From assembly GCA_965240325.2 (NCBI GenBank), contig OZ251230.1:2480001-2544000 (forward strand): 64,000 nt of DNA, read 5' to 3'. Position 1 is the first letter of the stretch. Every line of letters starts with the position of its first letter. The stretch comes from Rebecca billardiae RCC1528 (Eukaryota > Protista > Haptophyta). The notes beneath the pieces were generated by a model. That model worked only from the letters and a program-made list of their open reading frames with translations. It did not search any database and was not told where the DNA came from. Below are positions 1 to 60,472 of the stretch, piece by piece. Made by a program: the position numbers and the translations under genes.

Positions 1-3000
1 GGCGCAGTGTCGGAGCCACCCGGCCGCGCCCGGCAGCCGGCGCAGCTGCGGCCGTGGCGGGCACGCTGTGGCCGGAGCGCTCGGCGGCGAGCTCTGCAGT
101 TGAGCGCAGCGCGGCGCCGCTCGGCTGGTGTGGGCGCGAGCGCTCGGGGCGGGGCGCGCCGGCGGCGGCGAGGGCGGCGAGGGTGCTGCACGCTGGGGCG
201 GCGGCGCCGCCCGCGCCGCCGCCCTGCGCGCGCGGGCTCGGAGGCGCGGCGATGCGCGCGCGGCAGCCCTCGCCCTGCGCGCAGCTGCCGTGGCCGTCGC
301 CGCCCGGTGCCGATGTGGCGGCGGCGTCGGCGCGATCAGCCTTTGGAGCTCCGCCGGGTGCACGCCGCGGTTGCCCCCGCCGCGGCCTCGCGCGCCCGAC
401 CGAGCTCTCCAGCCGCAGCGCGAAGCTGTTGGTGGGCGCGATGGCGCGCGCCGCGCCGCGCGCCGCGGCGGCCGACTCGCGCCGGAGCGACTTCAGGTCC
501 GCTTCGAGCAGCTTGACGACCATGTCTCTTAACGCGTGGTACAGCCGCACGGTGGGCGGCGGCGGCTGCTGCGCGCGCGAGAGCGCCTCGCGCAGCAGCC
601 GCGCGCCCAGGAGCACCAGCGCGCCCGCCAGCGCGATCACGCCCACCGCCGCCGGGAGCGGAAGGCCAGTCGGCGTGTGAGCTCCGTCGGCGCGCGCCGC
701 GGCGCCGTGCCCGGCCTCTCCGCCCGACGGCGCCGCGCTGAAGAGTCCGACGGCGACGGCGAGCTGAACGAAGAGCGTCGAGCACAAGCTCTGCGCCAGC
801 AGCGCGCGCTGCCCCGCCTGCTCCGCCGCCATCAGCACCGCCGCCAGCACCGAGTGCTCGTCGGCCAGCAGCCACAGCAGGCTGGCGCACACTTCCGCAG
901 CACTGCTCCGCGGCGGCCGGCGCGGCACCTCGAAGGCGGCGCGCTCGGGCAAGCGCGGGCGCTCGTTCGGGGCGGCGAAGCGCACCACGCCGCTTGTTGC
1001 GAGGGCCCCGCTGTCGCCCGGTGTCGACGGCGGTCGCCGCACCTTGGCCGTGGGCTCGACGCGCAGCGCGGGCCCAGGGGCCGCGAAGCCGGCGCGGCGC
1101 GCGTCCGCCCCCGCCACCTCCGCCTCCGCCTCCGCCGCCGCCGCCGCCGCCGCCGCCGTCGCCGGTTCAATCCTCGGCTGCACCTCCGTGCCCTCCTCCT
1201 CCTCCTCCTCCTCCTCGCTCGTGTCTCCGCACTCGTCGTCCAGGCTCGGGCTTGCGCGGGGCGAGAGCGGCCCACCGACCCTCCGCTCGCGCACGGGCGT
1301 GCCAACGGCCGTCAAGTCGTCGTCGTCACACCTGCCGCCGTCCGGAGCGGTCAGGCTTGGGCACCCGCGGGGAGAGTAGAGAGAGGCGGTGGCATCGGCG
1401 CGGGCGCGCGCCTGCGTGCTGACGGTGAGCGCGCACTCGGGCGAGGGGGCAGCGGCGGGCGTGTCGCGCGAGGGCTCGATCCGCGCCGCCATCTCGTCCG
1501 CCGACCCCTCGCTCCGCGCCTCCTCCTCCTCCTCCTCCACTGCAGACGCGTGTAGGCTGGCGAGCTCGGCCGCGCGTGCGCCGAGCGCGGCTGCCGCGAC
1601 GGCGGCTGCGTGCTCTGAGCAGGGCGCGGCTTCGTCGGCTCGCGGGGCGGCGGCGTGGGGCGTGGCCATGGTGCCCACGACCGAGTGCAGCCTGGTGAGC
1701 ACGAACGAGCGCCGCGCCTCCGACTTGCGCACGAGCGTGCTCGAGTGCCGGCCGAGCAGGCGGCTGCTCCGGTCGTCAGGCGACGCGGACGCGCCCGCGC
1801 TCGCGCGCTCGGACTCGTACCAGCGGCGGTGCTTCCAGAGCGCGCGGCGGTCGTAGATCGCGGCGAGGAGGAGGAGGCAGCCGTTGAGCGCGACGAGGAG
1901 GTACACGGTCCGCGGCACGGTGCGCGCGGCGAGCGAGACCACCGCCGCAAACGCCACCTGCGCGAGGCTCTGGCTCGAGGACGCTGCCGCCGGCAGGAGG
2001 AGTGGCGTGGCGGCTGCCGCGTCGTCGTCTCGCTCGTCCGCGCCCGAGCCGGTGTCGACGTCGGGCGGGGGCATGACGCCGGCAAAGTCGGTGAGGTGGT
2101 CGCACGCGCAGAAGAGGAGCGGAAGACTCGCCAGGCCGCTCTGCGCCTCGCCCGCCTCGACGCCATCCTCGGGCGGCGGCGCGAGCGCGCACCCGTCGGC
2201 GCTCCAGCCGCCGCGCGCCGTTTCCCAGAAACGGCATTGCGCCGCCGCGAGCACGTCCGGCATGCCCACGCCGGCGCGCGGTGGCACGGCGATGAGCAGC
2301 GGCTCGGGCAGGCCCGAGACGTCGATCTCGCCGCCACCCGCCGCGCGCAGCGTCACGGAGAACACGTGCGTCAGCACCTCCGCCCCGCCCTCCACCGCGC
2401 CGTCCGCGCCGAGCGCGAGCGCTCCGTCGACGGACGCGCCAGACTTGAGGTCTCGCGCGACCGAGGTGAGCACGACGTCGACGCCGGCGGCGAGCGAGAG
2501 GTTGCGCAGGAAGGAGAGGGCCTCCGGGCGGACGAGCAGCCCCCCGTGCGCGTCCAGCGCCGGGATCCACCGCCCCGCCACCAGCGCGTCCGCGGTGGTG
2601 CGCACGGCCGTCACGTTGAGCGACACGCCTGGGTACTGTGTGGCCAGCTCGCCGGGCGCCGCGCCGGCCAGCGCGGCGGCACCCAGGCCGTCGAGCGCGG
2701 CGGTGGCGGCGTCGGCGAGGGCGTCGTCCTCGCGCGGGGAGAGGTCGATGCGCGCGCTCAGCACCGCGTCGACCGCGCCCGCCAGCGCTGCGCTCGCGCC
2801 CAGCGCCGCGCCCACCTCCGCCACGCCGCGCGCGAGCTCCGCGGCGTGCGCGAGCGCGGCCGCGGCGTCGCCGCCGTCGAGCGAGATTGGCGCGTCGAGC
2901 ACGGCGGCGAGCGACGCGACCGCCTGCGCGAGGCCGGACGGCTCGCGCGTCGTGATCGCGCCCGCTGCGATGGTGAGCTCGAGCAGCTCGTCGCGCGCCT

Positions 3001-3042
3001 GCCGCAGCTCCTCGCGGCTCAAGCTCCCCTCGATCGCAAGGC

Positions 3043-3076
<34 letters not shown>

Positions 3077-6000
3077 GAGCGGCGGCAGCGGCGGCAGAGC
3101 CGGCAGCGCCGGCCCCGATGTGTTCTGAGCAGGCGACGAGGCATTCGGCACGCCGCCGAGCTGGGCGGCATCGGCGTCGGGCTCGGCTTCGAGGCCGCCG
3201 CCGCGCCGGCTGCCGCCGCCAAACACGTCGCTCACCAGCCGCGCGAGCGCGTCGAGCAGCTGGTACGTCGCTGGCATGTCGGCGCGGGCGAGCGCGGCGC
3301 GCGCTTGCTCCAGCAACGAAGCGAGTGCCACCGGCGCCTCCTGCGTCCCGCCGAGCAGCAGAGGCGGCAGGACCGCGACGAGCGCGGACGCGCTCGCTGT
3401 CGCCGCCCACGCGTCGTGCACGCTCACGCGCACCGTGCTGTTCCCCGCGGGCAGCACCACGTCGAAGAGGAGCGGCGAGAGGCCGAGGGTGCGAAGGAGG
3501 CTCGGCGGTTGGGAGAGTGCTGCTACTCCAACCGCCGCAGCTCCCGTGCCGCCGCCGTCCGCGTGGTCGTTGGGGGTCGTCCGCTCGAAGGCGTAGCGCA
3601 GCGGCAGGTCGTCCGCGTCGTCGACCCAGCCGCTCGCGGACACGGCAAAGCGCGTGAGCAGCGCAACGCCCCTCGCGGGCTCGATCCCCACGCCGCCACC
3701 AAAGGGCGGGCGGTTCATGAGCACGCGGACGGAGGTGACCGCGGGCCGGTCGGCGCCCGAGACGGTGAGCTCGAACGCGTACTGGGCGCCGGGGGCGAGC
3801 GCGCCGCTGCGGAAGGCGAGGGTGGGGCCGGCCGCGCCCGTCGTCGTCACCGCCGCCGTGTCCGACAGATCGACCCCCGCGTCGCTCAGCGCGCCGCCCG
3901 CTCCCACGAGCAGCGCGCGCCACGCGTACTCGAAGCGCAGCACGCCGCGCGCCTGCAGCCGCGCCGACGCCTCGTCCAGCGCCGTCGAGACCACCAGCCT
4001 GTGCTCGGGCAGCTCGAAGGTGGGGCTGTACTTGGGGCGGCGCAGCGGCGCGAACGCGATGGCAGGCACCACGCCGGCGATGACGCGCACGCGCACCGAC
4101 GCCGCGGCGGACTCGGCGAAGCCGGCGCTCGACACGCGCACCTGCACTTCGTACTCGCCGAGCGGAAGCGAAAGTGGCGGCAGGGCGAGCGAGGGAAGAG
4201 CGGGCGTCGCGCCCGCCGCCGTCAGGTTGAGCGGCGCGCTGAGGGCGCTGCCCGAGTCCACGCCGCCGTCCGCGTCGGGCTCGAGCACGCGCGCGACGCT
4301 CCACTCGAACGCCAGCCCGTCGGAGCCGTCCGCCCGGTTCGGATCGGTCGAGGCCGAGGCGTCCACTGCGAATCTGTCTGCCGCGCCGACGATGCGGTCA
4401 CCGCCCGCGATGGTGGCGCGCAGGGGCAGCGTGCGCACCTCCACGCGCACGCTCGCGCTGCCAAAGGCTTGGGCCGCGCCCGCGCCCGCGCCGGGGTCGG
4501 TCGCCGTCATCTCGAGCTCGTACGTGTGCCCGGCGCTCAGCGAGAAGGGCGGCAGCACGAGCGAGCGCGCGGTCTCGTCGCTCAGCGCCGGGAGTCGGGC
4601 GCCGCCCGCCGGCGCGCCGGCGCCCGCCGTGGCCAGCACCGACGCGACGCGCCACGCAAAGGCCAGGGCGCCTTCCGCGGCGTGCTCGCCGGCGCTGCAG
4701 CCGGGCGGCTGTCGGATGCTCGCTTCGAGCACGAGCGGCTCGGTCGCCCACGTCGGCACCAGCGGCGGGCCAGCGATCGCAGCAAGCAGCGCGCGCGCGG
4801 ACGCGCGCTGCGCGCGGTGCCGCGCCGTCGCAGACGTGAGGCCGAGAAAGTTGGAGACGCGCAGCACAAAGCCCCACACGCGGCCGGCACTCGGCATGCG
4901 CACGGCCGCGACCATCGCGCCCGGCGGCAGCGCGCGCAGCTGCGCCTCCACCGCCGCCACCTCCGCCTCGGGCGCGCTCGTCACCGCCCGGTCGAGCGCC
5001 CACTCGAAGCTGAGCGGCTTCACGCCGCCGCCCGACGAGCTCGAGCCTTCGAGCCGCACTGTCTCGTTGGCGCACGCCGAGAGCGTCGCGGGCGCGCTGA
5101 GCACGGCGAGCGGCGTGGGGCACGGCGTGTCGCCGCACGGCGCGTCCACGTCGATGGCCGCCTGCAGGCCCGTGCCCACGTGCTCCGCCGCGCATGAGGG
5201 CGAGCATGCGCTGGGCATGAGCACGCCATCGCGCACGCGCACGCGCGCGCCGGGCGCGACGGCCGTGTCCGCGCTCAGCCTCACGACCAGCTCGGTGTCG
5301 GTCGCCCAGTAGCAGGAGGGCGGGGCGGCGGTCGTCGAGAGCGGCGGCGCGCCGGTGACGAGGGCGAGCGTCTCGTCGTCCAGCACGGCGGTGCACGGCT
5401 GCACGCCCGCCGCCATGCGCGCGCGGTCGGTCGGCTGCGTGTCAAACTCGAGGCGCAGCGCCGTCGCGCTGCCGTCAAACGCGGCGCGCACGAGGATCGG
5501 CGCGTGCAGCCCGATCTTGTTGAAGTACACGCCGCCCCCGGCGGCGGGCAGCGCGTGCTCGGGCGTGAACTGCTGCCCGTTCAGCGCCACGCGCACCTGC
5601 GACGCACCATCGGGCACGGCCACTGGCGTCTGCACGAGCAGCGCCCCGTCGCTGACCACGTCGGGCGGGACTGCCATCGGTCCAATCGACACGCGCAGCA
5701 GCGACAGCAGACCGGCTGGCCCCGCGCCGCCGAGTGCGCCAAACCCCGCGCCGCCGACGATGACAGCCACGCCCGCCAAGCCCGAGTTGGGCGAGCAGCT
5801 GTACACCGACGGCTCGGCGTAGAGATGGAAGACCGACCTCGACGCAGAGGTGCTACCGGCCCTCGCCCCGCCGACCGACAGCTCGAGAGCCACCGCGCGC
5901 GGCTCCTCGGCGGCGGGCGCGGCGGCGGGCAGCGTGCAGCGCGCGCGGCTTGTGCCGCCGATGGCCGGGAGCAGAGTGGCGGCGGCCGCGCACGCGAGGG

Positions 6001-9000
6001 GGTCGAGAGCGGGCAGCACGCAGCAGAGCTGGCCGTCGCCGTAGTCGGCGAAGCCCGCGCCGCTGAGCGTGACCACCGTCCCGCCGCGCACCGGGCCCGC
6101 AGGCGGGTCCAGCCCCTCCACCCGCACGCTGCCTGGGTCGTACAGCTCGACGCTCGGCGCGTCGAAGAGCGGGGGCACCGCGTACGCGCCGCCGTCGAGC
6201 GTGAGCCGCACCTCGTACGCGCCCGCGGCCAGCCCGATGCCGGTCGGCAGCGCGCACGCCGCCTCGCGCGCGGAGAGCACGGTCGCGGGCGTACTCGCGA
6301 GCGAGACAAACGCGCCGCCGGCACCGACGGGCTGCCCGAACGCGCAGCTGTCGCCACCGCCAGGCGTCGGCACAAAGGCAGCGCCCCGCAGCGTGAGGAG
6401 TGCGCCCGCGGCTCCGAGCGGCGCGCCGCGCGGCGTCACAGACTCGACAGTGGCGCGCAGCACTGGCGGCGGCGGGGGCATCGGCGGCGGTGACGGCGGT
6501 GGCGATGGTGTCGGCAAAGGCGGTGGGCTCGGCGGCGGAGACCAGGGCCGTGGGCTGGGCGTTGCGGACGATGGTGGTGGCGATGGCGGCGGGCTGGGCG
6601 GTGGGGTCGGCGGTGACGGCATTGGCGGTGGCGACGGCGGTGGCGATGGTGGCTGTGGGCTTGGTGGGATGGATGGCGGCGACGGGCTCGGCGGTGCGCT
6701 CGGAGGCGGGCTGGGTGGCGGCGGGCTTGGAGGAGGCGACGGCGCCGGGCCGGGCGGAGGGCTCGGTGGTGAGCGTGGGGCCGAGGTGGGTGGCGGCGAG
6801 GGCGGCGGCGAGGGCGGCGAGGGTGGCGGCAGAGGCTCAGTGCGAGGCGGTGGCGGTGGCGTCGGAGGCGGGCTGGGTGGCGGGCTGGGAGGTGGGCTCA
6901 GTGGTGGGTTCAGTGGTGGCGATGGCGGTGGCGACAGTGGTGGCGATGGCGGTGGCGACAGTGGTGGCGATGGCGGTGGCGACAGTGGTGGCGATGGCGG
7001 CGGCGACAGTGGTGGCGATGGCGGCGGCGATGGCGGCGGTGGGCGTGGCCGCGGCGACAGCGGTGGGCTCGATGGAGGGCTTGGTGGTGGACTCGGTGGC
7101 GGCGGGCTGGGTGGTGGCGACGGTGGCGGGCTTGGCGGCGACGACGGCGATGGCGACGGTGGCGGGCTCGGCGGCGGGCTCGGTGGGGGCGCAGGCGGCG
7201 GGCTCGGCGGCGGTGCTGGTGGCGGTGGGCTCGGCGGTGGGCTTGGGGGAGGCGATGGCGGTGGGCTGGGCGGCGGGCTCGGTGGCGGCGGGCTGGGAGG
7301 CGGGCTCGGAGGCGGACTTGGGGGCGGCACAGGTGGTGGCGAAGGTGGCGGCGACGGCGGCGGGCTTGGCGGCGGCGACGGCGGTGGCGACGGTGACGGC
7401 AAAGGCGGCGATGACGGAGGTGGCGACGGTGGCGGCATTGGCGGTGGCGACAGCGGGGGCGGGCTGGGCGGCGGAGACGGCGGTGGGCTCGGCGGAGGTG
7501 ACGGCGGTGAACTCGGCGTCGGCGGGACTGCGGGAGGCGATGGCGACGGGCTAGGCGGTGCGCTCGGAGGCGGGCTGGGTGGCGGCGGGCTTGGAGGAGG
7601 CGACGGCGCCGGGCCGGGCGGAGGGCTCGGTGGTGAGCGTGGGGCCGAGGTGGGTGGCGGCGAGGGCGGCGGCGAGGGCGGCGAGGGTGGCGGCAGAGGC
7701 TCAGTGCGAGGCGGTGGCGGTGGCGTCGGAGGCGGGCTCGGCTGCGGAGAAGGCGGCGGACTGGGCGGCAAGCTTGGCGGCGGTGATGGAGGCGGCGATG
7801 GTGGTGGGTTTGGTGGTGCGATCGGCGGCGGCGATGGTGGCGGTGGCGGTGGTGGGCTTCGTGACAGTGAGGGCGGAGAGCCGGGTGGCGGACTCGGCGG
7901 CAGGCTCGGTGGAGATAACGGTGGCGGCGGGCTCGGCGGTGCAGACGGCGGTGGGCTCAGTGGTGACCTCAGCGGTGAGGTTGGTGGCCCAACAGGTGGC
8001 GAGCTGGGCGGTGGCGACGGCGGTGGGGTTGGTGGCGACGATGGTGGTGACAACGGAGGTGGCGACGGCGTTGGTGATGGTGGCGGCGATGGAGGCGATG
8101 ATAATGGCGGTGGGCTCGGCAGCGGCGAGGGTGGCACGCTCGGCGTCGGCGACGAAAGTGGGGTTGGCGGCGGCGGAGGCGACGGCGGCGGGCTGGGCGG
8201 AGGCGACGGCGGTGGGCTCGGCGGTGGCGAAGGTGGTGACGATGGCAGGGGCGACGGCGGAGGGCTCGGCGGGGGCGAGGGCGGTGGTGATGGCGGTGGT
8301 GCGGGCGGTGGGCTGGGCGGTGGGCTGGGCGGTGGGCCGGGTGGTGGCGATGGTGGCGGGCTCGGTGCCGGGCTCGGTGGTAGGCTTGGTAGCGGCGAAG
8401 GTGGTGGGCTTGGCGGTGGTCGCGGAGGCGGGCTGGGCGGCGGGCTGGGCGACAGGCCGGGTGGCGGCGAAGGTGGCGGCGAGGGCAGCGGACTGTGCGG
8501 CGGGCTTGGTGGTGGACTCGGTGGTGGGTGTGGCGGCGGCGACGGCGGTGAGTGTGGCGGCGGCGACGGCGACAGGCTGGGTGGTGGGCTGGGTGGCCGC
8601 GACGGCGGTGGACTCGGCGGTGGCGATGGCTGCGGAGGCGATGGCGGCGGACTCAGGGGCGGCAAGGGCGGCGGGCTCGGCGGTGGCGATGGCGGCGGGC
8701 TCGACGGTGGGCTGGGGGGCGGCGACGGCGGAGGCGACGGTGGCGGGGGTGACGGTGGCGGTGACGGCGGTGCCGATCGCGGCGGGCCTGTCGGCGGCGA
8801 GGGCGGTGGGCTGGGTGGCGGCGATGGCGGTGGACTCGGTGGCGGTGACGGCGGCATGCTTGGCGGCGGTGATGGCAGCGGTGATGGCGGCGGGCTCGGC
8901 GGCGGTGACGGCGGTGGCGAGGGCGGCAGGCTCGGCGGCGGTGAGGGCGGAGGGCTGGGTGGCGTCGACGGCGGTGGACTCGGCGGCGGCAACGGCGGCT

Positions 9001-18000: not shown

Positions 18001-21000
18001 GCGGCGAAGGTGGTGGCGACGGCGGCGGCGAAGGCGGTGGCGATGGAGGCGGACTGGGCGGCGGGCTCGGGGGCGGTGAGGGCGGAGGCGACGGCGGCGG
18101 GGACGGCGGTGGGGATGGCGGCGGACTGGGCGGTGGGCTCGGTGGCGGTGAGGGCGGAGGGCTGGGCGGTGGGCTGGGTGGAGGCGGCGAGGGCGGCGGG
18201 CTTGGCGGCGGGCTCGGCGGTGGGCTCGGTGGGGGCGAAGGCGGCGGACTGGGCGGCGGGCTCGGTGGCGGACTCGGCGGCGGCGACGGTGGCGGGCTCG
18301 GCGGCGGGCTCGGCGGCGGAGAAGGCGGCGGGCTCGGCGGTAGGCTCGGCGATGGGCTCGGCGGCGGGCTGGGCGGCGGCGGAGATGGCGGCGGCGACGG
18401 TGGTGGGCTCGGTGGCGGCGATGGTGGCGGCGAGGGCGGTGGGCTGGGTGGCGGCGACGGCGGTGGACTCGGCGGTGGGGACGGCGGCGGCCCTGGCGGC
18501 AGCCCTGGCGGCGGTGATGGCGGCGGGCTCGGCGGAGGCGATGGTGGCGGGCTCGGTGGCGGGCTCGGTGGTGGCTTTGGCGGCGGCGAGGGCGGGGGGC
18601 TGGGCGGGGGGCTGGGTGGTGGCGGCGACGGCGGCGGGCTAGGCGGCGGGCTGGGCGGCGGGCTTGGTGGAGGCGAAGGCGGCGGGCTGGGCGGCGGACT
18701 CGGCGGCGGGGACGGCGGCGGGGACGGTGGTGGCGACGGCGGCGGGCTTGGTGGCGGAGAAGGAGGCGGGCTCGGCGGCGGGCTCGGCGGCGGGCTCGGC
18801 GGCGGGCTGGGCGGAGGTGGTGACGGCGGCGGCGAAGGTGGTGGCGACGGCGGCGGCGAAGGCGGTGGCGATGGAGGCGGGCTGGGCGGCGGGCTCGGGG
18901 GCGGTGAGGGCGGAGGCGACGGCGGCGGGGACGGCGGTGGGGATGGCGGCGGACTGGGCGGTGGGCTCGGTGGCGGTGAGGGCGGAGGGCTGGGCGGTGG
19001 GCTGGGTGGAGGCGGCGAGGGCGGCGGGCTTGGCGGCGGGCTCGGCGGTGGGCTCGGTGGGGGCGAAGGCGGCGGACTGGGCGGCGGGCTCGGTGGCGGA
19101 CTCGGCGGCGGCGACGGTGGCGGGCTCGGCGGCGGGCTCGGCGGCGGAGAGGGCGGCGGGCTCGGCGGTGGGCTCGGCGGTGGGCTCGGCGGTGGGCTCG
19201 GCGGCGGGCTGGGCGGCGGCGGAGATGGCGGCGGCGACGGTGGTGGGCTCGGTGGCGGCGATGGTGGCGGCGAGGGCGGTGGGCTGGGTGGCGGCGACGG
19301 CGGTGGACTCGGCGGTGGGGACGGCGGCGGCCCTGGCGGCGGTGATGGCGGCGGTGATGGCGGCGGGCTCGGCGGAGGCGATGGTGGCGGGCTCGGTGGC
19401 GGGCTCGGTGGTGGCTTTGGCGGCGGCGAGGGTGGGGGGCTGGGCGGGGGGCTGGGTGGTGGCGGCGAGGGCGGCGGGCTGGGCGGCGGGCTGGGCGGCG
19501 GGCTGGGCGGTGGCGACGGCGGCGGGCTCGGCGGCGGGCTCGGCGGCGGCGACGGCGGCGGGGTCGGCGGCGGCGACGGCGGCGGGCTCGGCGGTGGCGA
19601 AGGCGGCGGGCGCGGTGGTGGGCTGGGCGGTGGGCTCGGGGGTGGGCTCGGCGGCGGCGGGGACGGCGGCGGTGAAGGCGGTGGTGAAGGCGGTGGCGAA
19701 GGCGGCGGCGATGGAGGCGGGCTGGGCGGCGGGCTCGGGGGCGGTGAGGGCGGAGGCGACGGCGGCGGGGACGGCGGTGGGGATGGCGGCGGTCTGGGCG
19801 GTGGGCTCGGTGGCGGTGAGGGCGGAGGGCTGGGTGGTGGGCTGGGTGGCGGCGGCGAAGGCGGCGGGCTTGGCGGCGGGCTCGGCGGCGGGCTTGGCGG
19901 GGGCGAAGGCGGCGGACTGGGCGGCGGGCTCGGCGGCGGGCTCGGCGGTGGGCTCGGCGGCGGGCTCGGCGGCGGGCTCGGCGGCGGGCTGGGCGGAGGT
20001 GGAGACGGCGGCGGCGACGGTGGTGGTGACGGCGGTGGCGAAGGCGGCGGCGCTGGAGGCGGGCTGGGCGGCGGGCTGGGTGGCGGCGACGGCGGAGGCG
20101 ACGGCGGCGGGGACGGCGGCGGGGACGGCGGCGGGCTCGGTGGCGGGCTTGGCGGCGGCGAAGGCGGCGGGCTGGGCGGTGGGCTGGGTGGCGGTGGCGA
20201 CGGCGGCGGGCTGGGCGGCGGGCTTGGCGGCGGGCTCGGCGGTGGGCTCGGAGGCGGGCTCGGTGGCGGGCTCGGTGGTGGCGACGGTGGTGGCGACGGC
20301 GGCGGGCTTGGCGGTGGCGACGGCGGTGGGCTAGGCGGCGGCGAGGGTGGCGGGCTGGGCGGCGGCGATGGTGGTGGACTCGGCGGTGGAGGTGACGGTG
20401 GCGGGCTTGGAGGTGGGGAGGGCGGTGGACTTGGCGGCGGGCTGGGTGGAGGACTAGGCGGAGGTGATGGCGGCGGGCTCGGAGGTGGGCTCGGCGGAGG
20501 GCTGGGTGGCGGTGACGGTGGTGGCGACGGTGGTGGAGGTGACGGCGGCGGGCTGGGTGGCGGGCTTGGCGGCGGGCTCGGCGGTGGGCTCGGCGGCGGG
20601 CTCGGCGGCGGCGAAGGCGGAGGGCTCGGAGGCGGAGAAGGGGGCGGGCTCGGCGGGGGCGACGGCGGCGGGCTCGGAGGCGGGCTCGGTGGAGGGCTAG
20701 GCGGTGGCGATGGTGGTAGACTCGGCGGTGGAGGTGACGGTGGCGGACTTGGAGGTGGGGAGGGCGGTGGACTTGGCGGCGGGCTGGGTGGAGGACTAGG
20801 CGGAGGTGATGGCGGCGGGCTCGGAGGCGGGCTCGGCGGAGGGCTGGGTGGTGCTGACGGTGGTGGCGACGGCGGTGGAGGTGACGGCGGCGGGCTTGGC
20901 GGCGGGCTTGGCGGCGGGCTCGCCGGTGGGCTCGGAGGCGGGCTCGGTGGCGGGCTCGGTGGTGGCGACGGTGGTGGCGACGGCGGCGGGCTTGGCGGTG

Positions 21001-24000
21001 GCGACGGCGGTGGGCTAGGCGGCGGCGAGGGTGGCGGGCTGGGCGGCGGAGATGGTGGTGGACTCGGCGGTGGAGGTGACGGTGGCGGGCTTGGAGGTGG
21101 GGAGGGCGGTGGACTTGGCGGCGGGCTGGGTGGAGGACTAGGCGGAGGTGATGGCGGCGGGCTCGGAGGCGGGCTCGGCGGAGGGCTGGGTGGCGGTGCC
21201 GGTGGTGGCGACGGCGGTGGAGGTGACGGCGGCGGGCTGGGTGGCGGGCTTGGCGGCGGGCTCGGCGGTGGGCTCGGCGGCGGGCTCGGCGGCGGCGAAG
21301 GCGGAGGGCTCGGAGGCGGAGAAGGGGGCGGGCTCGGCGGGGGCGATGGCGGCGGGCTCGGAGGCGGGCTTGGCGGAGGGCTGGGCGGCGGCGATGGTGG
21401 CGGCGACGGCGGTGGAGGTGACGGCGGTGGGCTTGGCGGAGGCGATGGCGGCGGGCTCGGCGGCGGAGAAGGGGGCGGGCTCGGCGGGGGCGATGGCGGC
21501 GGGCTCGGAGGCGGGCTAGGCGGAGGGCTGGGCGGCGGTGATGGTGGCGGCGACGGCGGTGGTGGTGACGGCGGTGGGCTCGGCGGTGGCGATGGTGGCG
21601 GGCTCGGCGGCGGGCTTGGCGGCGGGCTCGGCGGCGGCGAAGGCGGAGGGCTGGGAGGCGGAGAAGGGGGCGGGCTCGGCGGGGGCGATGGCGGCGGGCT
21701 CGGAGGCGGGCTTGGCGGAGGGCTGGGCGGCGGCGATGGTGGCGGCGACGGCGGTGGTGGTGACGGCGGTGGGCTCGGCGGTGGCGATGGTGGCGGGCTC
21801 GGCGGCGGGCTCGGCGGCGGGCTTGGCGGGGGCGAGGGCGGAGGGCTCGGAGGCGGGCTCGGCGGAGGGCTGGGTGGTGGTGACGGTGGTGGCGACGGCG
21901 GTGGAGGTGACGGCGGCGGGCTGGGCGGCGGGCTTGGCGGCGGGCTCGGCGGTGGGCTCGGAGGCGGGCTCGGTGGCGGGCGCGGTGGTGGCGACGGTGG
22001 TGGCGACGGCGGCGGGCTTGGCGGTGGCGATGGCGGTGGGCTAGGCGGCAGCGAGGGTGGCGGGCTGGGCGGCGGCGATGGTGGTGGACTCGGCGGTGGA
22101 GGTGACGGTGGCGGGCTTGGCGGTGGGGGAGGGCGGTGGACTTGGCGGCGGGCTGGGTGGAGGACTAGGCGGGGGTGATGGCGGCGGGCTCGGAGGCGGG
22201 CTGGGTGGTGGGCTCGGCGGCGGCGACGGTGGCGGCGACGGTGGCGGAGGTGATGGCGGCGGGCTCGGCGGTGGCGATGGGGGCGGGCTCGGCGGCGGGC
22301 TCGGCGGCGGGCTCGGCGGCGGCGAAGGCGGAGGGCTCGGAGGCGGAGAAGGGGGCGGGCTCGGCGGGGGCGACGGCGGCGGGCTCGGAGGCGGGCTTGG
22401 CGGAGGGCTGGGCGGCGGCGATGGTGGCGGCGACGGCGGTGGAGGTGACGGCGATGGGCTCGGCGGTGGCGATGGCGGCGGGCTTGGCGGCGGGCTCGGC
22501 GGCGGGCTCGGCGGCGGCGACGGCGGAGGGCTCGGTGGTGGGCTGGGAGGAGGGCTCGGCGGCGGCGAGGGCGGAGGGCTCGGCGGTGGGCTGGGTGGCG
22601 GGCTAGGTGGCGGTGACGGCGGTGGCGACGGCGGTGGAGGTGACGGCGGCGGGCTCGGCGGTGGCGATGGTGGCGGGCTGGGCGGCGGCGAGGGTGGCGG
22701 GCTGGGCGGCGGCGATGGTGGTGGACTCGGCGGTGGAGGTGACGGTGGCGGGCTTGGAGGTGGTGAGGGCGGAGGGCTCGGCGGCGGGCATGGCGGCGGC
22801 GAAGGCGGCGGCCTCGGGGGCGGCGAGGGCGGCGGGCTCGGCGGCGGCGAGGGCGGCGGGCTTGGTGGCGGGTTTGGTGGTGGGCTGGGAGGCGGCGACG
22901 GCGGCGGGACCGGTGGCGGTGGTGACGGCGGCGGTGACGGCGGCGGTGACGGCGGCGGTGACGGCGGCGGTGATGGCGGCGGGCTCGGCGGCGGCGACGG
23001 CGGTGGACTCGGAGGCGGGCTTGGCGGCGGCGGGCTCGGTGGTGGCGACGGTGGTGGGCTGGGCGGTGGAGACGGCGGTGGCGATGGTGGCGGAGGTGAC
23101 GGCGGCGGTGACGGTGGCGGCGACGGCGGCGGCGGGCTCGGAGGCGGGCTCGGTGGTGGGCTGGGCGGTGGAGACGGCGGTGGCGATGGTGGCGGAGGTG
23201 ACGGCGGCGGTGACGGCGGCGGAGACGGCGGTGGCGACGGCGGCGGGCTCGGGGGCGGGCTCGGAGGCGGTGACGGTGGTGGACTCGGCGGCGGGCTGGG
23301 AGGTGAGTTGGGCGGTGGCGACGGGGGTGGGCTCGGCGGTGCGCTTGGCGGCGGCGGGCTGGGCGGTGGAGACGGTGGTGGAGACGGCGGCGGCGAGGGT
23401 GGTGGGCTCGGGGGCGGCGAAGGCGGCGGCGAGGGCGGTGGCGAGGGTGGCGGCGAAGGCGGAGGTGACGGCGGCGGGCTCGGGGGCGGTGATGGCGGTG
23501 GCGATGGCGGCGGAGGGCTTGGCGGTGGCGACGGCGGCGGGCCGGGCGGCGGTGACGGCGGCGGCGATGGCGGCGGGCTGGGAGGTGGCGAAGGCGGCGG
23601 CGATGGTGGAGGGCTCGGCGGCGGCGACGGCGGCGGTGAAGGTGGTGGGCTCGGGGGCGGAGACGGCGGCGGCGACGGTGGCGGTGGGCTCGGTGGCGGC
23701 GAGGGCGGCGGGCTTGGGGGCGGCGGCGGCGGCAGCTCGATCGAAGGCAGGTTGTCTCCCATGTCTGACGCTGACGTGCCGCGCGCCACCGAGTCCCCGG
23801 TGCCAAGCTTGCCGGCCGTCCCAGCTCCCCAGCTGTGTCAGGCGAGGGCGGCGCGCCCAGCGTGGCGCGGCGCGTGGGGAGGCGCATGGTCCGCTCGGTG
23901 TCTGCACTCGGGCGGCGCGGCGGCGGGCGGCCGTGGCGCGTGCGCCCGAGGAGCGTGTGCGCGCGTGCGCGCGCACCACTTAAGGCCCTCCGTGTCCAGC

Positions 24001-25887
24001 ACCGCGCACGTGTGGTCGTACCCGCACGCGAAAAGCGAGACAGTCCGGCCGGTGCCCAGCCGGACTGGGAGGAGCGCGTCGCCCATCTCGCCCGCGCTCC
24101 CGCCGCGCGTCAAGCCGTCGCCCGCCCCGTTCTCGCCGCTCGCGCCGTCGCCCCAGCTGCGCGCGCGGTGAGCCACAGGAGCGGGACGCGGGCAGGCGGG
24201 CGGGCGGTCGGGCGGGCGGGCCTGTCAGCCAGGCGCACACGGGCGCTCCAGCAGGCCATGCCGGAGCAGGCGCTCGGGGGCTTGCGGGCGCGTGCAGCGA
24301 GGCCCGCGTCTGCCTCCGCCCGTGGCGGGCAGCGCGGTGGGGAGGCAGTACATCGGCCGAGCGCGTGTCGCGCGGCTTGCAGCGCACCATTTGATCTCCC
24401 CGCTTGTGAGCAGCGCGCACGAGTGGTCGCTGCCTACCGACAGCGCCGACGGGACGAGGCCGGCGCCCAAGCCGCCGTCGAGCGCGGTCGGAGACGTCTG
24501 GGCAGTTGTGCTCCCGGTGCCGAGACGGCCGTTCCCGCCCTGCCCCCAGCACTTGACTGAGTCGTCGGCCAGCCGCAGGCAGGTGTGGACGTCCCCAACC
24601 GCAACCTCGACCGCGCTGCCGCCCACGACGACGTACGGCAGGTTTGTCCCCATCGTGCTCGCCACATCGCCCTTGTTGGTGGTCGTGCCGTCGCCCAGCT
24701 GCCCGGCGTTGTTCCGGCCCCAGCTGCGCACGCACGCGCGCCGCACGCGTGCCGCGTGGGCCGGGGCGGCGACTCCGCTCGGCTCGGCTCCGAGGCGACG
24801 GGCGCGGAGGGGCGGCGCCGCGGCGTGCGCTGGCGCGCACCACTTGAGGAGGGCGTCCGTGAAGACGACGCAGCCATGGAAGCCGATGTGAACACTCCAC
24901 TGGCTGATGGCTGTGGCTGTGCCGAGGTCAATGTGGCCGCCTGGTGCCCAGAGGTCTGAAGTGGACTCGTACCCGAGCATGCCGTAGTCACCGCGGCCCC
25001 AGCACTGGATCCCCGTGACGCTCGAGATCGTCGAGCGCACGCACGTGTAGTAGTACCCACACCGCACCTCGTGCACGGTCGCGCCTGCTCCAAAGTCGAT
25101 CGCTGGCAGGGTGTCGCCCATCGCGCGGCCAACGCCGTCCCCGGCGTTCACCGTGTCGCCTGTGCCGAGCTGGCCCTGCGCGTTCGTGCCCCAGCTGCGG
25201 CGCGAGCGGCGAGAGCGGAGCACGCGGGCGCGCGGGCGCGTGGGGCGGGCGCGGACCGGGGGTGCGAGCGCGTCAGATGCGTGCCGGGAGCGAGAGCCCG
25301 TGCGGCGGTCGCAGGCAGGCGGCAGGGCGCAGGCGCTCGCCAGCCAGGGGCACGCGGGGCTCGCAGCGTGGCGGCTCACGCCTCGCCGCGCACCATCTGA
25401 CGGTCGAGTCCGACAGCAGCGCGCACGAGTGCTGCCAGCTCGCGGAGACGCTCGTCGCCGTGGTCCCGCTCGGCAGTTGGATGAACGGCAGGCTGAGACC
25501 AAGCTCGCCCGCATTGTCGCCGCGGTGGGCGGTGTCGTCGTAGCCAAGGCGACCGCCGCCGCCGCCGAAGCTGCGGTGGGCGATGCGCGAGCGCGGGCGC
25601 GCGCCGCGTCGGCTCGGCGCGGGCCACCCCTCGCGCGTACGAGGGGTGGGGCGGCGCGGCGCGTGCGCGCAACCGGTCGCCGAGTGGGCGGGCGGGATCA
25701 CGCGGGCGGGCGAGCGAGTGGTTCGCGGGGCGCACCACTTGATCTGGCCAACGGCGTAGAGCAGGCACGTGTGAACCCTGCCGATTGTGATGGCTGTTGG
25801 CGTGCCAGCGCCGCCTATGCTCACCAGCGCGCCCGGGTGCAGCCCTGGGACGACGAGGGCGAGCACGAGGGCGAGCCCGATGGCCAT
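1..25887 (-). CDS. Giant polycystin-1-like surface glycoprotein (signal peptide - RCC1-like propeller - (SPPP)n rod - IPT/TIG x3 - REJ - GPS - TM); 3' end lies outside the window
   Basis: Manual translation. Exons 25887-25736, 25570-25394, 25194-24841, 24723-24388, 24156-23977 and 23832-<1, with five GT..AG introns. Scanning by eye found no in-frame stop from ~22124 to position 1. One extra G in the run at 22125-22129 shifts the frame. About 25,000 coding nt in the window (>8,300 aa). N-terminus MAIGLALVLALVVPG is signal-peptide-like. Confidence 0.85.
1856..2236 (-). other. GPS autoproteolysis motif followed by the first transmembrane helix
   Basis: CRFWETARGGWSADGC...LLCACDHLTDFA (canonical HL|T site at ~2090-2098), then TVYLLVALNGCLLLLAAIY. 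A second hydrophobic helix, AAVGVIALAGALVLLGA, lies at ~600-655. Confidence 0.85.
3585..5110 (-). other. REJ (receptor for egg jelly / PKD1) domain
   Basis: Motifs LEGSSSSGGGVKPLSFEW, IAGGDRIVG...VDASASTDPN...LAFEWS and MNRPPFGGGVGIEPARGVALLTRFAVSASGWVDDADDLPLRYAF are typical of REJ modules. Confidence 0.85.
5520..6460 (-). other. Three IPT/TIG Ig-like domains of the giant protein
   Basis: Translated motifs VESVTPRGAPLGAAGALLTLRGAAF, VEGLDPPAGPVRGGTVVTLSGAGF and PSVYSCSPNSGLAGVAVIVGGAGFG...VRVALNGQQF match the IPT/TIG pattern. Confidence 0.75.
6466..23733 (-). repeat. Coding (Ser-Pro3-4)n extensin/HRGP-like repeat, ~17.3 kb (~5,750 aa), with higher-order units
   Basis: The minus strand reads CCG/CCC/AGC/TCG codons giving SPPP(P) throughout. 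Higher-order periods of ~684 nt (12097/12781), ~828-840 nt (16971/17811/18639) and ~342 nt (20453/20795/21137) are visible from marker motifs. Confidence 0.95.
23740..25820 (-). other. Seven RCC1/BLIP-II-like repeats (N-terminal beta-propeller head of the giant protein)
   Basis: The spliced translation gives seven H(T/S/G)C...C(W/F)G....G.LG-type units, e.g. HSCALLSDSTVRCWGTNAQGQLGTGD, HTCLRLADDSVKCWGQGGNGRLGTGS, HTCAVLDTEGLKCWGAGTAGKLGTGD. Confidence 0.85.
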
Positions 25888-59982: not shown

Positions 59983-60022
59983 TGCCGCGCAAACGCCCGC
60001 TGATGAATAAGTGGGACGCCAC

Positions 60023-60472
60023 CAGGGCTCCAAGACGGTACACCGGACACCGGTAAATACCGTACCGAGGTGCGTACCGGTGCGTACCGGTATCGGGTAT
60101 GCACCGCCACAAACTGCCGCGCACCGGTGAGAGTCCGGGAGGGGTCGTGTGCGCCCGGACCACAGCACCCGCGAGTACGGAGTACGCGGAGCTGTCACTT
60201 GTCAGTGTCCGAGGTCGGAGTCACTGCTGGCACTCTCAGGGGAGGCGCCAATACGCCGCCGATTTCGTCCAATAATTGGGCTGTTTCTATATCATATATA
60301 ATCAGTAAAATAATAGGCCCAAAATTTTTCTTCGCCTCGGGCTGGCGGGGCCCCGGGGGGGACACCCCCCGGACCCCCCCGGCCCCCGCGCGCGCACCGG
60401 TGTACCGGTACACCGGCGCCTGCGGCGCCGGTGCACCGGTACGCGTACCGAGCACCGGATCTTTGAGCCCTG
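60023..60472. mobile_element. hAT-type MITE in a divergent intergenic (putative bidirectional promoter) region
   Basis: TIR CAGGGCTCCAAGA / TCTTTGAGCCCTG, perfect 8-bp TSD GACGCCAC (60015-60022, 60473-60480) and subterminal ACCGGT-rich repeats. Confidence 0.92.

What the first reader, a model, noticed from the sequence alone, without database searches (positions are those of the whole stretch)
1..25887. Hidden >8,300-aa polycystin-1-like receptor with a beta-propeller head on a micron-scale polyproline stalk
Seen: one minus-strand gene, absent as such from the ORF track, joins a signal peptide, 7 RCC1/BLIP-II-like repeats, ~5,750 residues of SPPP(P), three IPT/TIG domains, REJ, an intact GPS (HL|T) motif and TM helices. 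Known: REJ+GPS+TM defines PKD1/REJ-type receptors. SPn repeats are hydroxylated and glycosylated into rigid polyproline-II rods in green-algal HRGPs (agglutinin shafts; the PKD-like axial protein of Chlamydomonas mastigonemes). Inference: at ~0.31 nm per residue the rod would be ~1.8 micrometres long. It could hold a binding head far from the cell and couple contact or pull to a GPS-cleaved membrane module, as a flagellar-hair axis, adhesion/prey-capture filament or gamete-recognition fibre. I do not know of this head-rod-REJ-GPS combination being described.
Basis: partly seen in the sequence, partly recalled or inferred. Interest (0 to 1): 0.9.

Follow-up and report, generated by a model that had tools for sequence, protein, structure and literature searches.

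The report
Giant proline-rod REJ/GAIN surface protein gene
A very GC-rich alga, probably a pavlovophyte haptophyte rather than a green alga, has a gene for a surface protein of over 8,300 residues: a propeller-shaped head on a Ser-Pro-Pro-Pro rod that could reach about 1.8 micrometres, anchored by a self-cleaving polycystin-type base; as assembled, one extra base breaks its reading frame, and no expression data exist.

Summary
On the minus strand lie a start codon with a signal peptide and a seven-bladed RCC1-type propeller in six exons with five GT-AG introns. A 5,750-residue Ser-Pro3(4) tract follows, then TIG domains, a REJ domain, a GAIN domain with an HL|T cleavage motif, and three membrane helices. 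The frame is still open at the window's left edge.

Four corrections:
- The frame is broken once: one extra C in a C5 run (+ strand 22125-22129). Three sister repeat copies have C4 and stay in frame, so this is a homopolymer error or a very recent lesion.
- The closest named relatives are from Diacronema lutheri and Pavlovales sp., so this is probably a haptophyte.
- No PLAT or PKD-channel domain was found here or in complete relatives. Only the ectodomain is polycystin-1-like.
- Only one TIG passes Pfam's cut-off.

The rod-plus-base design is conserved: one uninterrupted D. lutheri ORF carries a signal peptide, about 1,900 residues of SPPP and the same base, which GenBank's model truncates.

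This scan had already found paralogues elsewhere in the same genome. The closest published analogue is Chlamydomonas MST3/Mstax. I rate it a new variant of a known kind. Function, glycosylation and transcription are untested.

The parts
25822..25887 (-). Start codon and predicted signal peptide (22 residues, hydrophobic core)
   Evidence: First ATG after an upstream in-frame stop. The sequence was read directly. GC content drops to 0.58 upstream of the gene.
25736..25887 (-). Head exon 1: signal peptide plus the closing strands of the propeller
   Evidence: Donor G|GTGCGC at 25735.
25394..25570 (-). Head exon 2: one RCC1 blade
   Evidence: Pfam RCC1_2 at 1e-4. The splice sites were read directly.
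24841..25194 (-). Head exon 3: two RCC1 blades
   Evidence: Pfam RCC1 at 4e-7 and WD40_RLD at 1.6e-7.
24388..24723 (-). Head exon 4: two RCC1 blades
   Evidence: Pfam RCC1 at 4.5e-13. PDB matches to HERC2 RLD at 2.4e-19 and UVR8 at 4.4e-19.
23977..24156 (-). Head exon 5: one RCC1 blade
   Evidence: Pfam RCC1 at 9e-4.
23733..23832 (-). Start of the giant exon 6: first half of blade 7, running straight into the rod
   Evidence: Acceptor ACAG|C at 23833. The translation runs from the blade motif directly into poly-Pro.
6490..23732 (-). Ser-Pro3(4) rod of 5,750 residues (73% Pro, 23% Ser, no Tyr, 5 Lys)
   Evidence: Period-12 DNA identity is only about 70%.
22125..22129 (-). Frameshift site: a C5 run on the coding strand where three sister repeat copies have C4
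   Evidence: No intron-like signals lie in 20500-23730. The upstream frame stops at 22041-22043.
14090..19300 (-). Zone of 828/840-nt higher-order repeats at 96-99.5% identity. This is the part of the rod whose copy number depends most on the assembly.
   Evidence: Smaller such zones lie at about 11490-12800 and 20290-21300.
5510..6409 (-). Three Ig-like IPT/TIG-type units directly after the rod
   Evidence: Pfam TIG scores 27.2 bits for the third unit and 19.7 bits (below cut-off) for the second. The first is not detected but aligns colinearly with the TIG region of P0001.
3341..4555 (-). REJ domain
   Evidence: Pfam PF02010 at 1.8e-32, profile positions 40-421 of 452. HMMER finds 1,275 relatives.
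2078..3016 (-). GAIN domain (five helices plus a beta sandwich) ending in the GPS motif. The predicted cleavage between Leu and Thr falls at 2093|2092.
   Evidence: Pfam GPS at 5.4e-6. The AlphaFold model has pLDDT 73-89 here. The top Foldseek matches are BAI2/BAI3/latrophilin GAIN domains, E 2e-8. The family profile matches adhesion-GPCR GPS regions.
1850..1918 (-). Membrane helix 1
   Evidence: Hydropathy scan. It aligns with TM1 of the relatives.
596..805 (-). Membrane helices 2 and 3 (740-805 and 596-664), preceded by the conserved D/E-H-S-x-L motif
2..595 (-). Cytoplasmic tail. The reading frame is still open at the window edge, so the 3' end of the gene lies outside the window.
   Evidence: Complete relatives continue with a calmodulin-like EF-hand pair and two more helices.

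Best explanation
This is one gene of a pavlovophyte (haptophyte) family of stalked surface proteins.

The design:
- A signal peptide sends the protein into the secretory path.
- A disulfide-stapled seven-bladed RCC1-type propeller forms the distal binding head.
- About 5,750 residues of Ser-Pro3 form an extended polyproline-II rod, up to about 1.8 micrometres long.
- TIG domains, a REJ domain and a GAIN domain form the membrane-proximal base.
- The GAIN domain cleaves itself at HL|T, and the two halves stay attached non-covalently.
- Membrane helices hold the protein in the plasma or flagellar membrane: three are seen here and five in complete relatives.

The most likely working mode is a long-reach tether. 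The head binds a particle, surface or partner cell far from the membrane. Pull along the rod loads the GAIN domain. The signal is then passed to the helices, and in relatives to a cytoplasmic IQ motif and a calmodulin-like EF-hand pair. Alternatively the outer part is shed.

Shown: the gene model, the domain identities, the GAIN fold, and conservation of the rod-plus-base design in relatives.
Inferred: hydroxylation and glycosylation, rigidity, cleavage, location, force sensing and ligand.

The single extra base at 22125-22129 is most simply an assembly homopolymer error. If it is real, this copy is a freshly broken paralogue.
For: Gene model:
- Five introns have identical GTGCGC donors and splice in frame.
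- The frame is open from 22129 to 2, with GC3 of 0.87-0.96.

Domains:
- RCC1, REJ at 1.8e-32, TIG and GPS.
- The GAIN model matches BAI and latrophilin GAIN domains.
- There is one Cys pair per blade, seven in all, and a signal peptide. Both fit an extracellular head.

Selection on the rod peptide:
- 112 different 12-mers encode SPPP, six Ser codons from both codon families are used, and only 3.8% of residues are neither Ser nor Pro.

The frameshift looks like a one-base insertion:
- Three sister copies at 95-97% identity have one C fewer and are in frame.
- No intron-like signals lie nearby.

Conserved design:
- The base is 38% identical over 1,069 aligned positions to P0001.
- D. lutheri L002 is a single 5,921-codon stop-free frame, about 5,880 residues from its first Met: signal peptide, about 1,900 aa of SPPP, then the same base.
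- L001 and L003 are Pro-rich in frame up to their contig edges.

Cytoplasmic Ca2+ parts in relatives:
- An IQ-like motif and a calmodulin-like EF-hand pair.

Precedent:
- A rod of several hundred nanometres on a polycystin-type anchor exists in Chlamydomonas MST3/Mstax (PMC11015965; 10.1101/2024.12.24.630281).
- Haptophytes carry ExAD-like GT47 genes (PMC5371791).
Against: - The frame is broken as assembled, and no reads of this genome could be found to check it.
- There is no transcript or protein evidence for this gene.
- 44% of the rod lies in repeat copies at least 95% identical, so its length may be over- or under-assembled.
- The 3' end is outside the window.
- The IQ motif conserved in eight relatives is not recognisable here. 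An acidic, Ala-rich insertion of about 300 aa takes its place.
- The membrane part could not be modelled with confidence (pLDDT under 50) and matches no solved polycystin.
- Hyp-glycosylation has not been shown in haptophytes.
- Nothing here points to a ligand or a location.
Confidence: 0.6

Rival explanations
1. The frameshift is real. The locus is then a recently inactivated paralogue, or makes only a secreted propeller with a 536-residue Ser-Pro tail. The rod-plus-base part has no signal peptide of its own and would not be made.
For: The sequence as given has the extra C. The family has many paralogues in this genome (earlier notes, unchecked), so losing one copy would cost little. No reads were available to contradict the base call.
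Against: Downstream of the shift, 7,376 codons are free of stops. They include 2,136 non-repetitive codons with strong codon periodicity and conserved domains, so any lesion must be very young. A single extra base in a G/C homopolymer within 80-85% GC repeats is a typical assembly error.
Confidence: 0.2
2. The protein is the axis or whole shaft of a flagellar or haptonemal hair, a haptophyte counterpart of the Chlamydomonas mastigoneme core MST3/Mstax, rather than a general cell-surface tether.
For: It is the same size class as MST3 (8,572 aa) and follows the same logic: signal peptide, Ser-Pro-rich polyproline, a membrane anchor of polycystin ancestry, and a long cytoplasmic part (PMC11015965; 10.1101/2024.12.24.630281). 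From my own knowledge, not checked here: pavlovophyte long flagella carry fine non-tubular hairs.
Against: The tract has none of MST3's MST1-binding repeat pattern, only SPPP units. There is no C-type lectin and no PKD2-like domain. The family carries several head types and rod lengths (unchecked notes), which fits a receptor repertoire better than one structural hair. No localisation data exist.
Confidence: 0.2
3. It is a structural coat or mucilage protein: a membrane-anchored extensin-like polymer that builds the cell covering. GAIN cleavage would serve only to release it, and no signalling would be involved.
For: Ser-Pro3-4 is the extensin repeat (PMC4769139). GAIN cleavage allows shedding. 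The IQ motif is lost in this copy.
Against: There is no Tyr in 5,750 residues, so the Tyr cross-link motifs of network extensins are absent. A folded propeller head sits at the far end, and the REJ/GAIN/multi-helix base with EF-hands is conserved in relatives. These are costly features for a filler protein.
Confidence: 0.15
4. The rod length is largely an assembly artefact: over-expansion or mis-joining in a repeat. The real protein would be much shorter.
For: 7.6 kb of the tract lies in 342-840-nt higher-order copies at 95-99.5% identity. One indel is already present.
Against: 56% of the tract is only 74-90% identical to any other part, and the longest exact repeat is 327 nt. Even with every higher-order zone collapsed to one copy, more than about 3,200 residues (about 1 micrometre) remain. 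Relatives in an independent PacBio assembly also have about 1,900 residues (PMC8379373).
Confidence: 0.12

Closest known systems
Chlamydomonas reinhardtii MST3 / Mstax (Cre06.g309951), the mastigoneme axial protein
   Same: A giant (8,572 aa) secreted protein. It has a signal peptide, a Ser-Pro-rich region that forms a glycosylated polyproline-II helix, globular domains, a rod hundreds of nanometres long, a membrane domain of polycystin ancestry and a long cytoplasmic tail. Six further Chlamydomonas proteins combine heads (LRR, SRCR, SEA) with poly-Pro regions and partial PKD2-like domains (PMC11015965; 10.1101/2024.12.24.630281).
   Different: MST3's anchor is a PKD2-like channel subunit completed by SIP. 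Here the anchor is REJ + GAIN/GPS + a few helices, with no PKD-channel or PLAT hit. MST3's shaft is 34-42 complex Hyp repeats wrapped by MST1. Here it is plain SPPP, about 13 times longer than MST3's own Ser-Hyp segment. The heads differ (C-type lectins against an RCC1 propeller). The lineages differ too: green alga against a probable haptophyte.
Polycystin-1 family and sea-urchin REJ proteins (PKD1, PKD1L1-3, PKDREJ, suREJ1-3)
   Same: A REJ domain followed by a GAIN domain with an HL|T GPS motif directly before the first membrane helix, with a large modular ectodomain containing Ig-like domains.
   Different: There is no PLAT domain after TM1, no 6-TM channel-like domain and no match to solved polycystin chains. 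Relatives have five helices, with an IQ motif and a calmodulin-like EF pair in the loops. The Ser-Pro rod and the RCC1 head have no counterpart in these proteins.
Adhesion GPCRs (latrophilin, BAI, GPR126 and others)
   Same: They are the best structural and profile matches for the GAIN/GPS part. They share the concept of a long adhesive ectodomain that transmits pull to an autoproteolysed GAIN domain.
   Different: There is no secretin-type 7-TM domain here. Only three helices are seen, five in relatives, and they have no detectable similarity.
Extensins and green-algal HRGPs (for example the Chlamydomonas sexual agglutinins, recalled from memory)
   Same: Ser-Pro3-4 repeats, and in the agglutinins a globular head on a polyproline shaft attached to the flagellar surface.
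   Different: There is no Tyr cross-link motif (0 Tyr). The tract is tens of times longer than in plant extensins. The membrane anchor is integral and carries a GAIN domain. Hyp-arabinosylation is unproven in haptophytes; only an ExAD-like GT47 is reported (PMC5371791).
TLP-4 glycofibrils from pond water (CryoSeek II)
   Same: A fibril whose only protein is a linear chain of tetrapeptide repeats containing Pro and Ser/Thr, held straight by its glycan coat. Its source organism is unknown (PMC11725842).
   Different: TLP-4's repeat is P-S/T-x-x with a dihydroxyproline. No head or anchor is known for it, and no link to this gene has been shown.

Membership tests
Polycystin-1 / REJ receptor family | REJ domain (PF02010) | tested here: met
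   1.8e-32, 112.9 bits against a cut-off of 25, profile positions 40-421 of 452.
Polycystin-1 / REJ receptor family | GAIN domain with a GPS motif (HL|T) directly before the first membrane helix | tested here: met
   Pfam GPS scores 27.3 bits against a cut-off of 22.5, and the motif C-x-C-D-H-L-T is present. The model matches GAIN domains at E 2e-8. TM1 lies about 55 residues further on. Cleavage itself was not tested.
Polycystin-1 / REJ receptor family | PLAT/LH2 domain in the first cytoplasmic loop | tested here: not met
   There is no PLAT hit at E up to 1 in the 700 residues after the GPS. Complete relatives P0001, P0003-P0006, P0012 and L002 have none either.
Polycystin-1 / REJ receptor family | Eleven helices, the last six forming a PKD-channel-like domain (PF08016) | tested here: inconclusive
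   The window holds three helices and no PKD_channel hit, but the 3' end of the gene lies outside it. Complete relatives have five helices and no PKD_channel hit.
Polycystin-1 / REJ receptor family | Similarity of the first membrane helices to those of PKD1 | tested here: inconclusive
   No PDB polycystin match was found by sequence or by profile. Models of the membrane part have pLDDT under 50, so no fold comparison is valid. The Atlas search gave no usable hit.
Adhesion GPCRs | Secretin-like 7-TM domain after the GAIN domain | tested here: not met
   There is no 7tm_2 hit, and only 3 helices (5 in relatives) are present.
MST3/Mstax-type mastigoneme axis | Repeats of long Hyp runs with (X-X-P)n that bind MST1 | tested here: not met
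   The tract decomposes into SPPP (1,090 units) and SPPPP (78 units). Long Pro runs are almost absent.
MST3/Mstax-type mastigoneme axis | PKD2-like membrane domain lacking S1, and C-type lectin domains | tested here: not met
   There is no PKD_channel or Lectin_C hit in the window's protein. The part beyond the window is unseen, but complete relatives lack both.
RCC1-like seven-bladed propellers | Seven RCC1 repeats closing into one propeller | tested here: met
   The spliced 434-aa head has seven blade motifs, and the N-terminal strands are placed to close the last blade. Pfam RCC1 and WD40_RLD hit the head exons. HERC2 and UVR8 match at about 1e-19. The fold itself was not modelled, because the spliced sequence has no reference.
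Extensin-type HRGPs | Ser-Pro3-5 repeats | tested here: met
Extensin-type HRGPs | Tyr-containing cross-link motifs | tested here: not met
   There is no Tyr in the 5,750 residues.
Extensin-type HRGPs | Prolines hydroxylated and O-arabinosylated, serines galactosylated | not testable with these tools
   This needs chemistry on the protein. The only indirect hint is the ExAD-like GT47 genes reported in haptophytes (PMC5371791).
Pavlovophyte stalked TIG-REJ-GAIN family (unnamed; D. lutheri KAG8459354 and KAG8462819, Pavlovales sp. KAJ1635852) | Colinear TIG - linker - REJ - GAIN/GPS - TM1 - conserved TM2/TM3 pair | tested here: met
   38% identity over 1,069 aligned positions, and 33% over the GAIN part, to P0001. 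Alignment A1 has invariant GPS cysteines, H-L-T, and H/R/L positions before and in TM2.
Pavlovophyte stalked TIG-REJ-GAIN family (unnamed; D. lutheri KAG8459354 and KAG8462819, Pavlovales sp. KAJ1635852) | Pro-rich stalk upstream of the base in the same frame | tested here: met
   This gene has it. So do L002 with about 1,900 aa, L003 with at least 575 aa, and L001 with at least 280 aa.
Pavlovophyte stalked TIG-REJ-GAIN family (unnamed; D. lutheri KAG8459354 and KAG8462819, Pavlovales sp. KAJ1635852) | IQ-like motif after TM1; calmodulin-like EF-hand pair and TM4-5 at the C-terminus | tested here: inconclusive
   The IQ-like motif is present in eight relatives but not recognisable here. The EF-hands and TM4-5 would lie beyond the window edge.

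The most novel reading that the evidence does not exclude
Pavlovophyte haptophytes carry a whole repertoire of micrometre-long 'antenna' proteins. Interchangeable binding heads sit on glycosylated Ser-Pro3 rods, and each rod is wired to a self-cleaving GAIN/REJ base with its own Ca2+/calmodulin-type switch. On this reading these proteins are the so far unidentified fine hairs or contact sensors of the flagellum, haptonema or cell surface. The pairing of a hydroxyproline-type rod with a polycystin-type anchor would then have arisen independently of, or long before, the Chlamydomonas mastigoneme. That would make it a general eukaryotic way to sense force or contact at a distance.
Probability: 0.15. 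Interest if true: 0.85.

Novelty: new variant of a known kind. Interest (0 to 1): 0.62.

Why it matters
If this gene is expressed, it gives a concrete molecular candidate for long surface filaments in haptophytes, a major group of marine algae whose surface receptors are almost unknown.

It would show that joining a polyproline rod to a polycystin-type anchor is not confined to the mastigoneme of green algae.

It also offers a very simple natural test object for two open questions. One is how GAIN and REJ modules read mechanical load. The other is how long a single glycosylated polyproline chain can be: about 1.8 micrometres, a third of the roughly 5-micrometre cell.

In practical terms, it shows that gene callers cut off such genes. 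The GenBank model of the D. lutheri relative lacks its signal peptide and about 1,900 residues of rod.

Tried and rejected
- **Reads.** The one run search found only runs holding 5-7% of the sampled words. Laying four of them gave only pieces of about 60 nt at about 90% identity inside the low-complexity tract, from other organisms. The frameshift, tract length and transcription therefore could not be tested.
- **An intron to repair the frame.** No GT[GA][CA]G donor and no GCAG acceptor lie anywhere in 20500-23730. Rejected.
- **In-frame introns hidden in the base.** GC3 stays at 0.87-0.96 throughout, so no long intron is evident. Short ones cannot be excluded.
- **PLAT, PKD channel or EF-hand in the last 700 residues.** None at E up to 1.
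- **PDB by sequence for the whole base.** No hit at E up to 0.1.
- **Fold of the membrane part.** It was modelled twice, from this gene and from the complete base of D. lutheri P0012. Both models had pLDDT under 50 outside the GAIN domain and EF-hands. I ran no fold search on the second model because the result would be meaningless.
- **ESM Atlas search with the base of P0012.** No usable hit.
- **Search for annotated full-length giants (4,400-14,000 aa) sharing the REJ part.** It timed out once and then found none.
- **BLIP-II as the closest head.** It is not among the 30 PDB matches. HERC2 and UVR8 are the best.
- **Top 150 REJ relatives.** None carries a long Ser-Pro tract as annotated. The three loci I opened show that gene calling removes these tracts.
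- **Literature.** Searches for this layout in haptophytes found no paper.
- **The spliced head.** It was not folded or searched as a whole, because it has no single reference and I did not type it.

Full report
**What is in the sequence**

Positions 1-26,000 are 73-86% G+C, with a strong G-over-C skew on the + strand between about 6,000 and 24,000. The flanks to the right are 57-66% G+C. On the minus strand, one frame has no stop codon from 24,109 to 2: 8,036 codons, of which 4,030 are Pro and 1,385 Ser. The mechanical ORF list misses it because the tract holds no start codon.

**The head**

Reading all three minus frames between 21,900 and 26,400 shows RCC1-like blade motifs jumping between frames. 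The segments are joined by five introns of 117-231 nt. All have the donor G|GTGCGC and a CAG|C acceptor. All sit in phase 2, inside the codon of the same conserved Cys.

The exons are 25887-25736, 25570-25394, 25194-24841, 24723-24388, 24156-23977, and 23832 onwards. The first 1,302 nt splice in frame to 434 residues. These comprise a 22-residue hydrophobic signal peptide, seven blades and a direct run into poly-Pro.

Each blade has one Cys pair (C-x9-C, once C-x12-C). This pattern suits an extracellular, disulfide-stapled propeller. Pfam finds RCC1, RCC1_2 and WD40_RLD on the exons. The best solved relatives are the HERC2 RCC1-like domain and UVR8, at about 1e-19. BLIP-II is not among them.

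**The rod**

The Ser-Pro tract has 536 residues in one frame (23,732 to about 22,130) and 5,214 in the next (to 6,490), 5,750 in all. It holds 4,193 Pro, 1,336 Ser, no Tyr and five Lys. It decomposes into 1,090 SPPP and 78 SPPPP units.

The tract is not a simple DNA repeat:
- Identity at a lag of 12 nt is only about 70%.
- 112 different 12-mers encode SPPP.
- All four Pro codons and all six Ser codons are used, from both Ser codon families.
- The longest exact repeat is 327 nt.

So the peptide has been conserved, not the DNA. That argues for selection and against a trivial assembly artefact.

On top of this lie younger higher-order repeats of 342/684 and 828/840 nt. About 44% of the tract (chiefly 14,090-19,300) has a copy elsewhere that is at least 95% identical. 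The rest is only 74-90% identical to anything else. Copy number in those zones depends on the assembly. Even with each zone collapsed to one copy, more than about 3,200 residues would remain.

**The frameshift**

The two tract frames differ by one base. On the coding strand the sequence reads C-C-C-T, then five C, then A-C-C at + strand 22125-22129. Three sister copies of the same higher-order repeat, 95-97% identical over about 140 nt, have four C at this spot and are in frame. There is no intron-like donor or acceptor anywhere in 20,500-23,730.

Read literally, the head product ends at a stop at 22,041-22,043. The 7,376 codons that follow would then lack a signal peptide. Those codons are free of stops and include 2,136 well-conserved non-repetitive codons. 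An extra base in a G/C homopolymer is therefore best explained as an assembly error, or else as a very young mutation.

I could not test this. No public run holds this genome, and the runs found carried only short low-complexity look-alikes.

**The base**

The 2,136 residues after the rod (window 6409-2) show the following:
- One TIG above Pfam's cut-off, one just below it, and a third supported only by colinear alignment to a relative.
- A REJ domain at 1.8e-32.
- A short poly-Pro linker.
- A GAIN domain ending in the GPS motif with H-L-T.

An AlphaFold model built on nine family sequences is confident (pLDDT 73-89) for five helices plus a beta sandwich. Its best Foldseek matches are the GAIN domains of BAI2, BAI3 and latrophilin (E 2e-8 to 6e-7). 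A family profile hits only adhesion-GPCR GPS regions in the PDB.

Three hydrophobic helices follow. The frame is still open at position 2, and GC3 stays at 0.87-0.96 all the way. The gene therefore continues beyond the window.

No PLAT, PKD-channel or EF-hand domain is found in the window. No solved polycystin matches. The membrane part could not be modelled with confidence.

**Relatives and organism**

An exhaustive HMMER search found 1,275 REJ relatives, the best about 38-41% identical. The closest named ones are Diacronema lutheri KAG8459354 and KAG8462819 and Pavlovales sp. CCMP2436 KAJ1635852. More distant relatives include a pelagophyte.

Together with the very high G+C (D. lutheri: 73%; PMC8379373), this points to a pavlovophyte haptophyte, not a green alga.

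Complete relatives share the order TIG - REJ - GAIN/GPS - TM1 - IQ-like motif - TM2/TM3 - calmodulin-like EF-hand pair - TM4/TM5. They have no PLAT or channel domain. In the present gene the IQ-like motif is not recognisable. An acidic, Ala-rich insertion of about 300 residues fills that loop.

**The rod belongs to the family**

The D. lutheri locus L002 has a single stop-free frame of 5,921 codons, about 5,880 residues from its first Met. It starts with a Met and signal peptide and runs through about 1,900 residues of SPPP. A small domain and a second Pro-rich linker follow, and it ends with the same base. The GenBank model begins only after the rod.

Two metagenomic relatives (L001, L003) are Pro-rich in frame up to the ends of their contigs. 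Rod and base in one reading frame are thus seen in independent assemblies. This is the best available support for the one-gene reading here.

None of the top 150 relatives shows a long Ser-Pro tract as annotated. A search for annotated giants found none. This fits systematic truncation by gene callers.

**Earlier findings of this scan**

Notes on other pieces of the same genome describe paralogues with RCC1, LRR or FG-GAP heads, rods of 2,500-11,200 residues and the same kind of base. I did not see those sequences.

I did test three of their claims myself: the haptophyte assignment, the overlooked D. lutheri gene, and the five-helix base with calmodulin-type motifs in relatives. The scan had therefore found this family before, on other DNA.

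**How it most likely works**

- *Shown:* a secreted propeller head, a very long Ser-Pro3 tract, a REJ-GAIN base and membrane helices, all in one transcription unit by sequence logic.
- *From established knowledge:* Ser-Pro3-4 tracts form extended polyproline-II helices of about 0.31 nm per residue. In plants and green algae they are hydroxylated and glycosylated into stiff rods. In the Chlamydomonas mastigoneme such helices span hundreds of nanometres (PMC11015965). GAIN domains cleave at HL|T and stay assembled until force or ligand separates them.
- *Inferred:* the head binds something up to about 1.8 micrometres from the membrane. This is about a third of the roughly 5-micrometre cell (PMC8379373). 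Pull along the rod then loads the GAIN domain, and the base signals or sheds.

The predicted topology puts the IQ motif and the EF-hands of relatives on the cytoplasmic side. That is consistent with a Ca2+-linked output.

The lack of Tyr argues against a cross-linked wall network. Whether haptophytes hydroxylate and arabinosylate such tracts is unknown. An ExAD-like GT47 has been reported in two haptophytes (PMC5371791).

**Comparison with what is known**

The closest published system is Chlamydomonas MST3/Mstax. It has 8,572 residues: a signal peptide, a Ser-Hyp segment, lectin domains, 34-42 Hyp repeats and a PKD2-like membrane domain. Six further Chlamydomonas proteins join heads and poly-Pro regions to partial PKD2-like domains (PMC11015965; 10.1101/2024.12.24.630281).

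The present protein works on the same design principle, but it is not a member of that family. Its repeat type, head and anchor all differ.

It shares REJ and GAIN/GPS with polycystin-1 and the sea-urchin REJ proteins. It fails the PLAT test, and no channel part is seen. I therefore call it a REJ/GAIN-type protein with a polycystin-1-like ectodomain, not a polycystin-1 homologue in full.

I found no paper describing this layout in haptophytes.

**Verdict**

- It is a new variant of a known kind.
- It is interesting mainly as one of the longer members of an unannotated haptophyte family; the scan's notes list paralogues with rods of up to about 11,200 residues.
- Its expression, modification, location and function are all still open.

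Noticed in passing
window 23833-25735 (-): All five head introns sit in phase 2 inside the codon of the same conserved Cys of the RCC1 repeat, and all share the donor GTGCGC. Two exons hold two blades each, as if an intron had been lost between them. This suggests that blades and introns were duplicated together.
   Followed up: partly
L002 4051-21813 (Diacronema lutheri JAGTXO010000041.1, reversed): The GenBank model KAG8459354.1 (3,751 aa) starts at locus position 10001. The same frame is open from 4051, and it encodes a Met, a signal peptide and about 1,900 residues of SPPP upstream. The public annotation is therefore truncated by roughly 1,950 residues.
   Followed up: yes
window 41753-43273 (-): A separate 507-residue ORF holds a canonical RCC1-like domain (Pfam WD40_RLD 8e-87, six RCC1 repeats) behind an F-box-like N-terminus. 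It has no signal peptide and no Cys pairs. It is probably an ordinary cytoplasmic RCC1-like protein, unrelated to the head.
   Followed up: partly
window 58570-60201 (-): A 544-residue ORF gives a weak hit to the ligand-binding domain of Cys-loop neurotransmitter-gated channels (E 1.4e-4, below Pfam's cut-off).
   Followed up: no
window 1-26000 against 26001-64000: The giant gene is 73-86% G+C, and 77% even in its non-repetitive domains, with GC3 about 0.9. The rest of the window is mostly 57-66%. A second very GC-rich island (0.80) lies at 48001-50000, where an 805-residue ORF has no Pfam hit.
   Followed up: no
alignment A1, loop between TM1 and TM2 (window about 860-1850): Eight relatives carry an IQ-type motif (hydrophobic-Q-x3-R/K-G-x3-R/K) after TM1. 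Complete relatives also carry a calmodulin-like EF-hand pair, which suggests an in-built Ca2+ switch. This gene has an acidic, Ala-rich insertion of about 300 residues where the motif would be.
   Followed up: partly
L001 and L003 (Logan contigs of SRR30664515): One sequencing run of unknown origin holds at least two different family members (P0001, P0004). Both have Pro-rich stalks cut off by the contig ends, and their C-terminal parts look frame-shifted compared with the D. lutheri proteins.
   Followed up: partly
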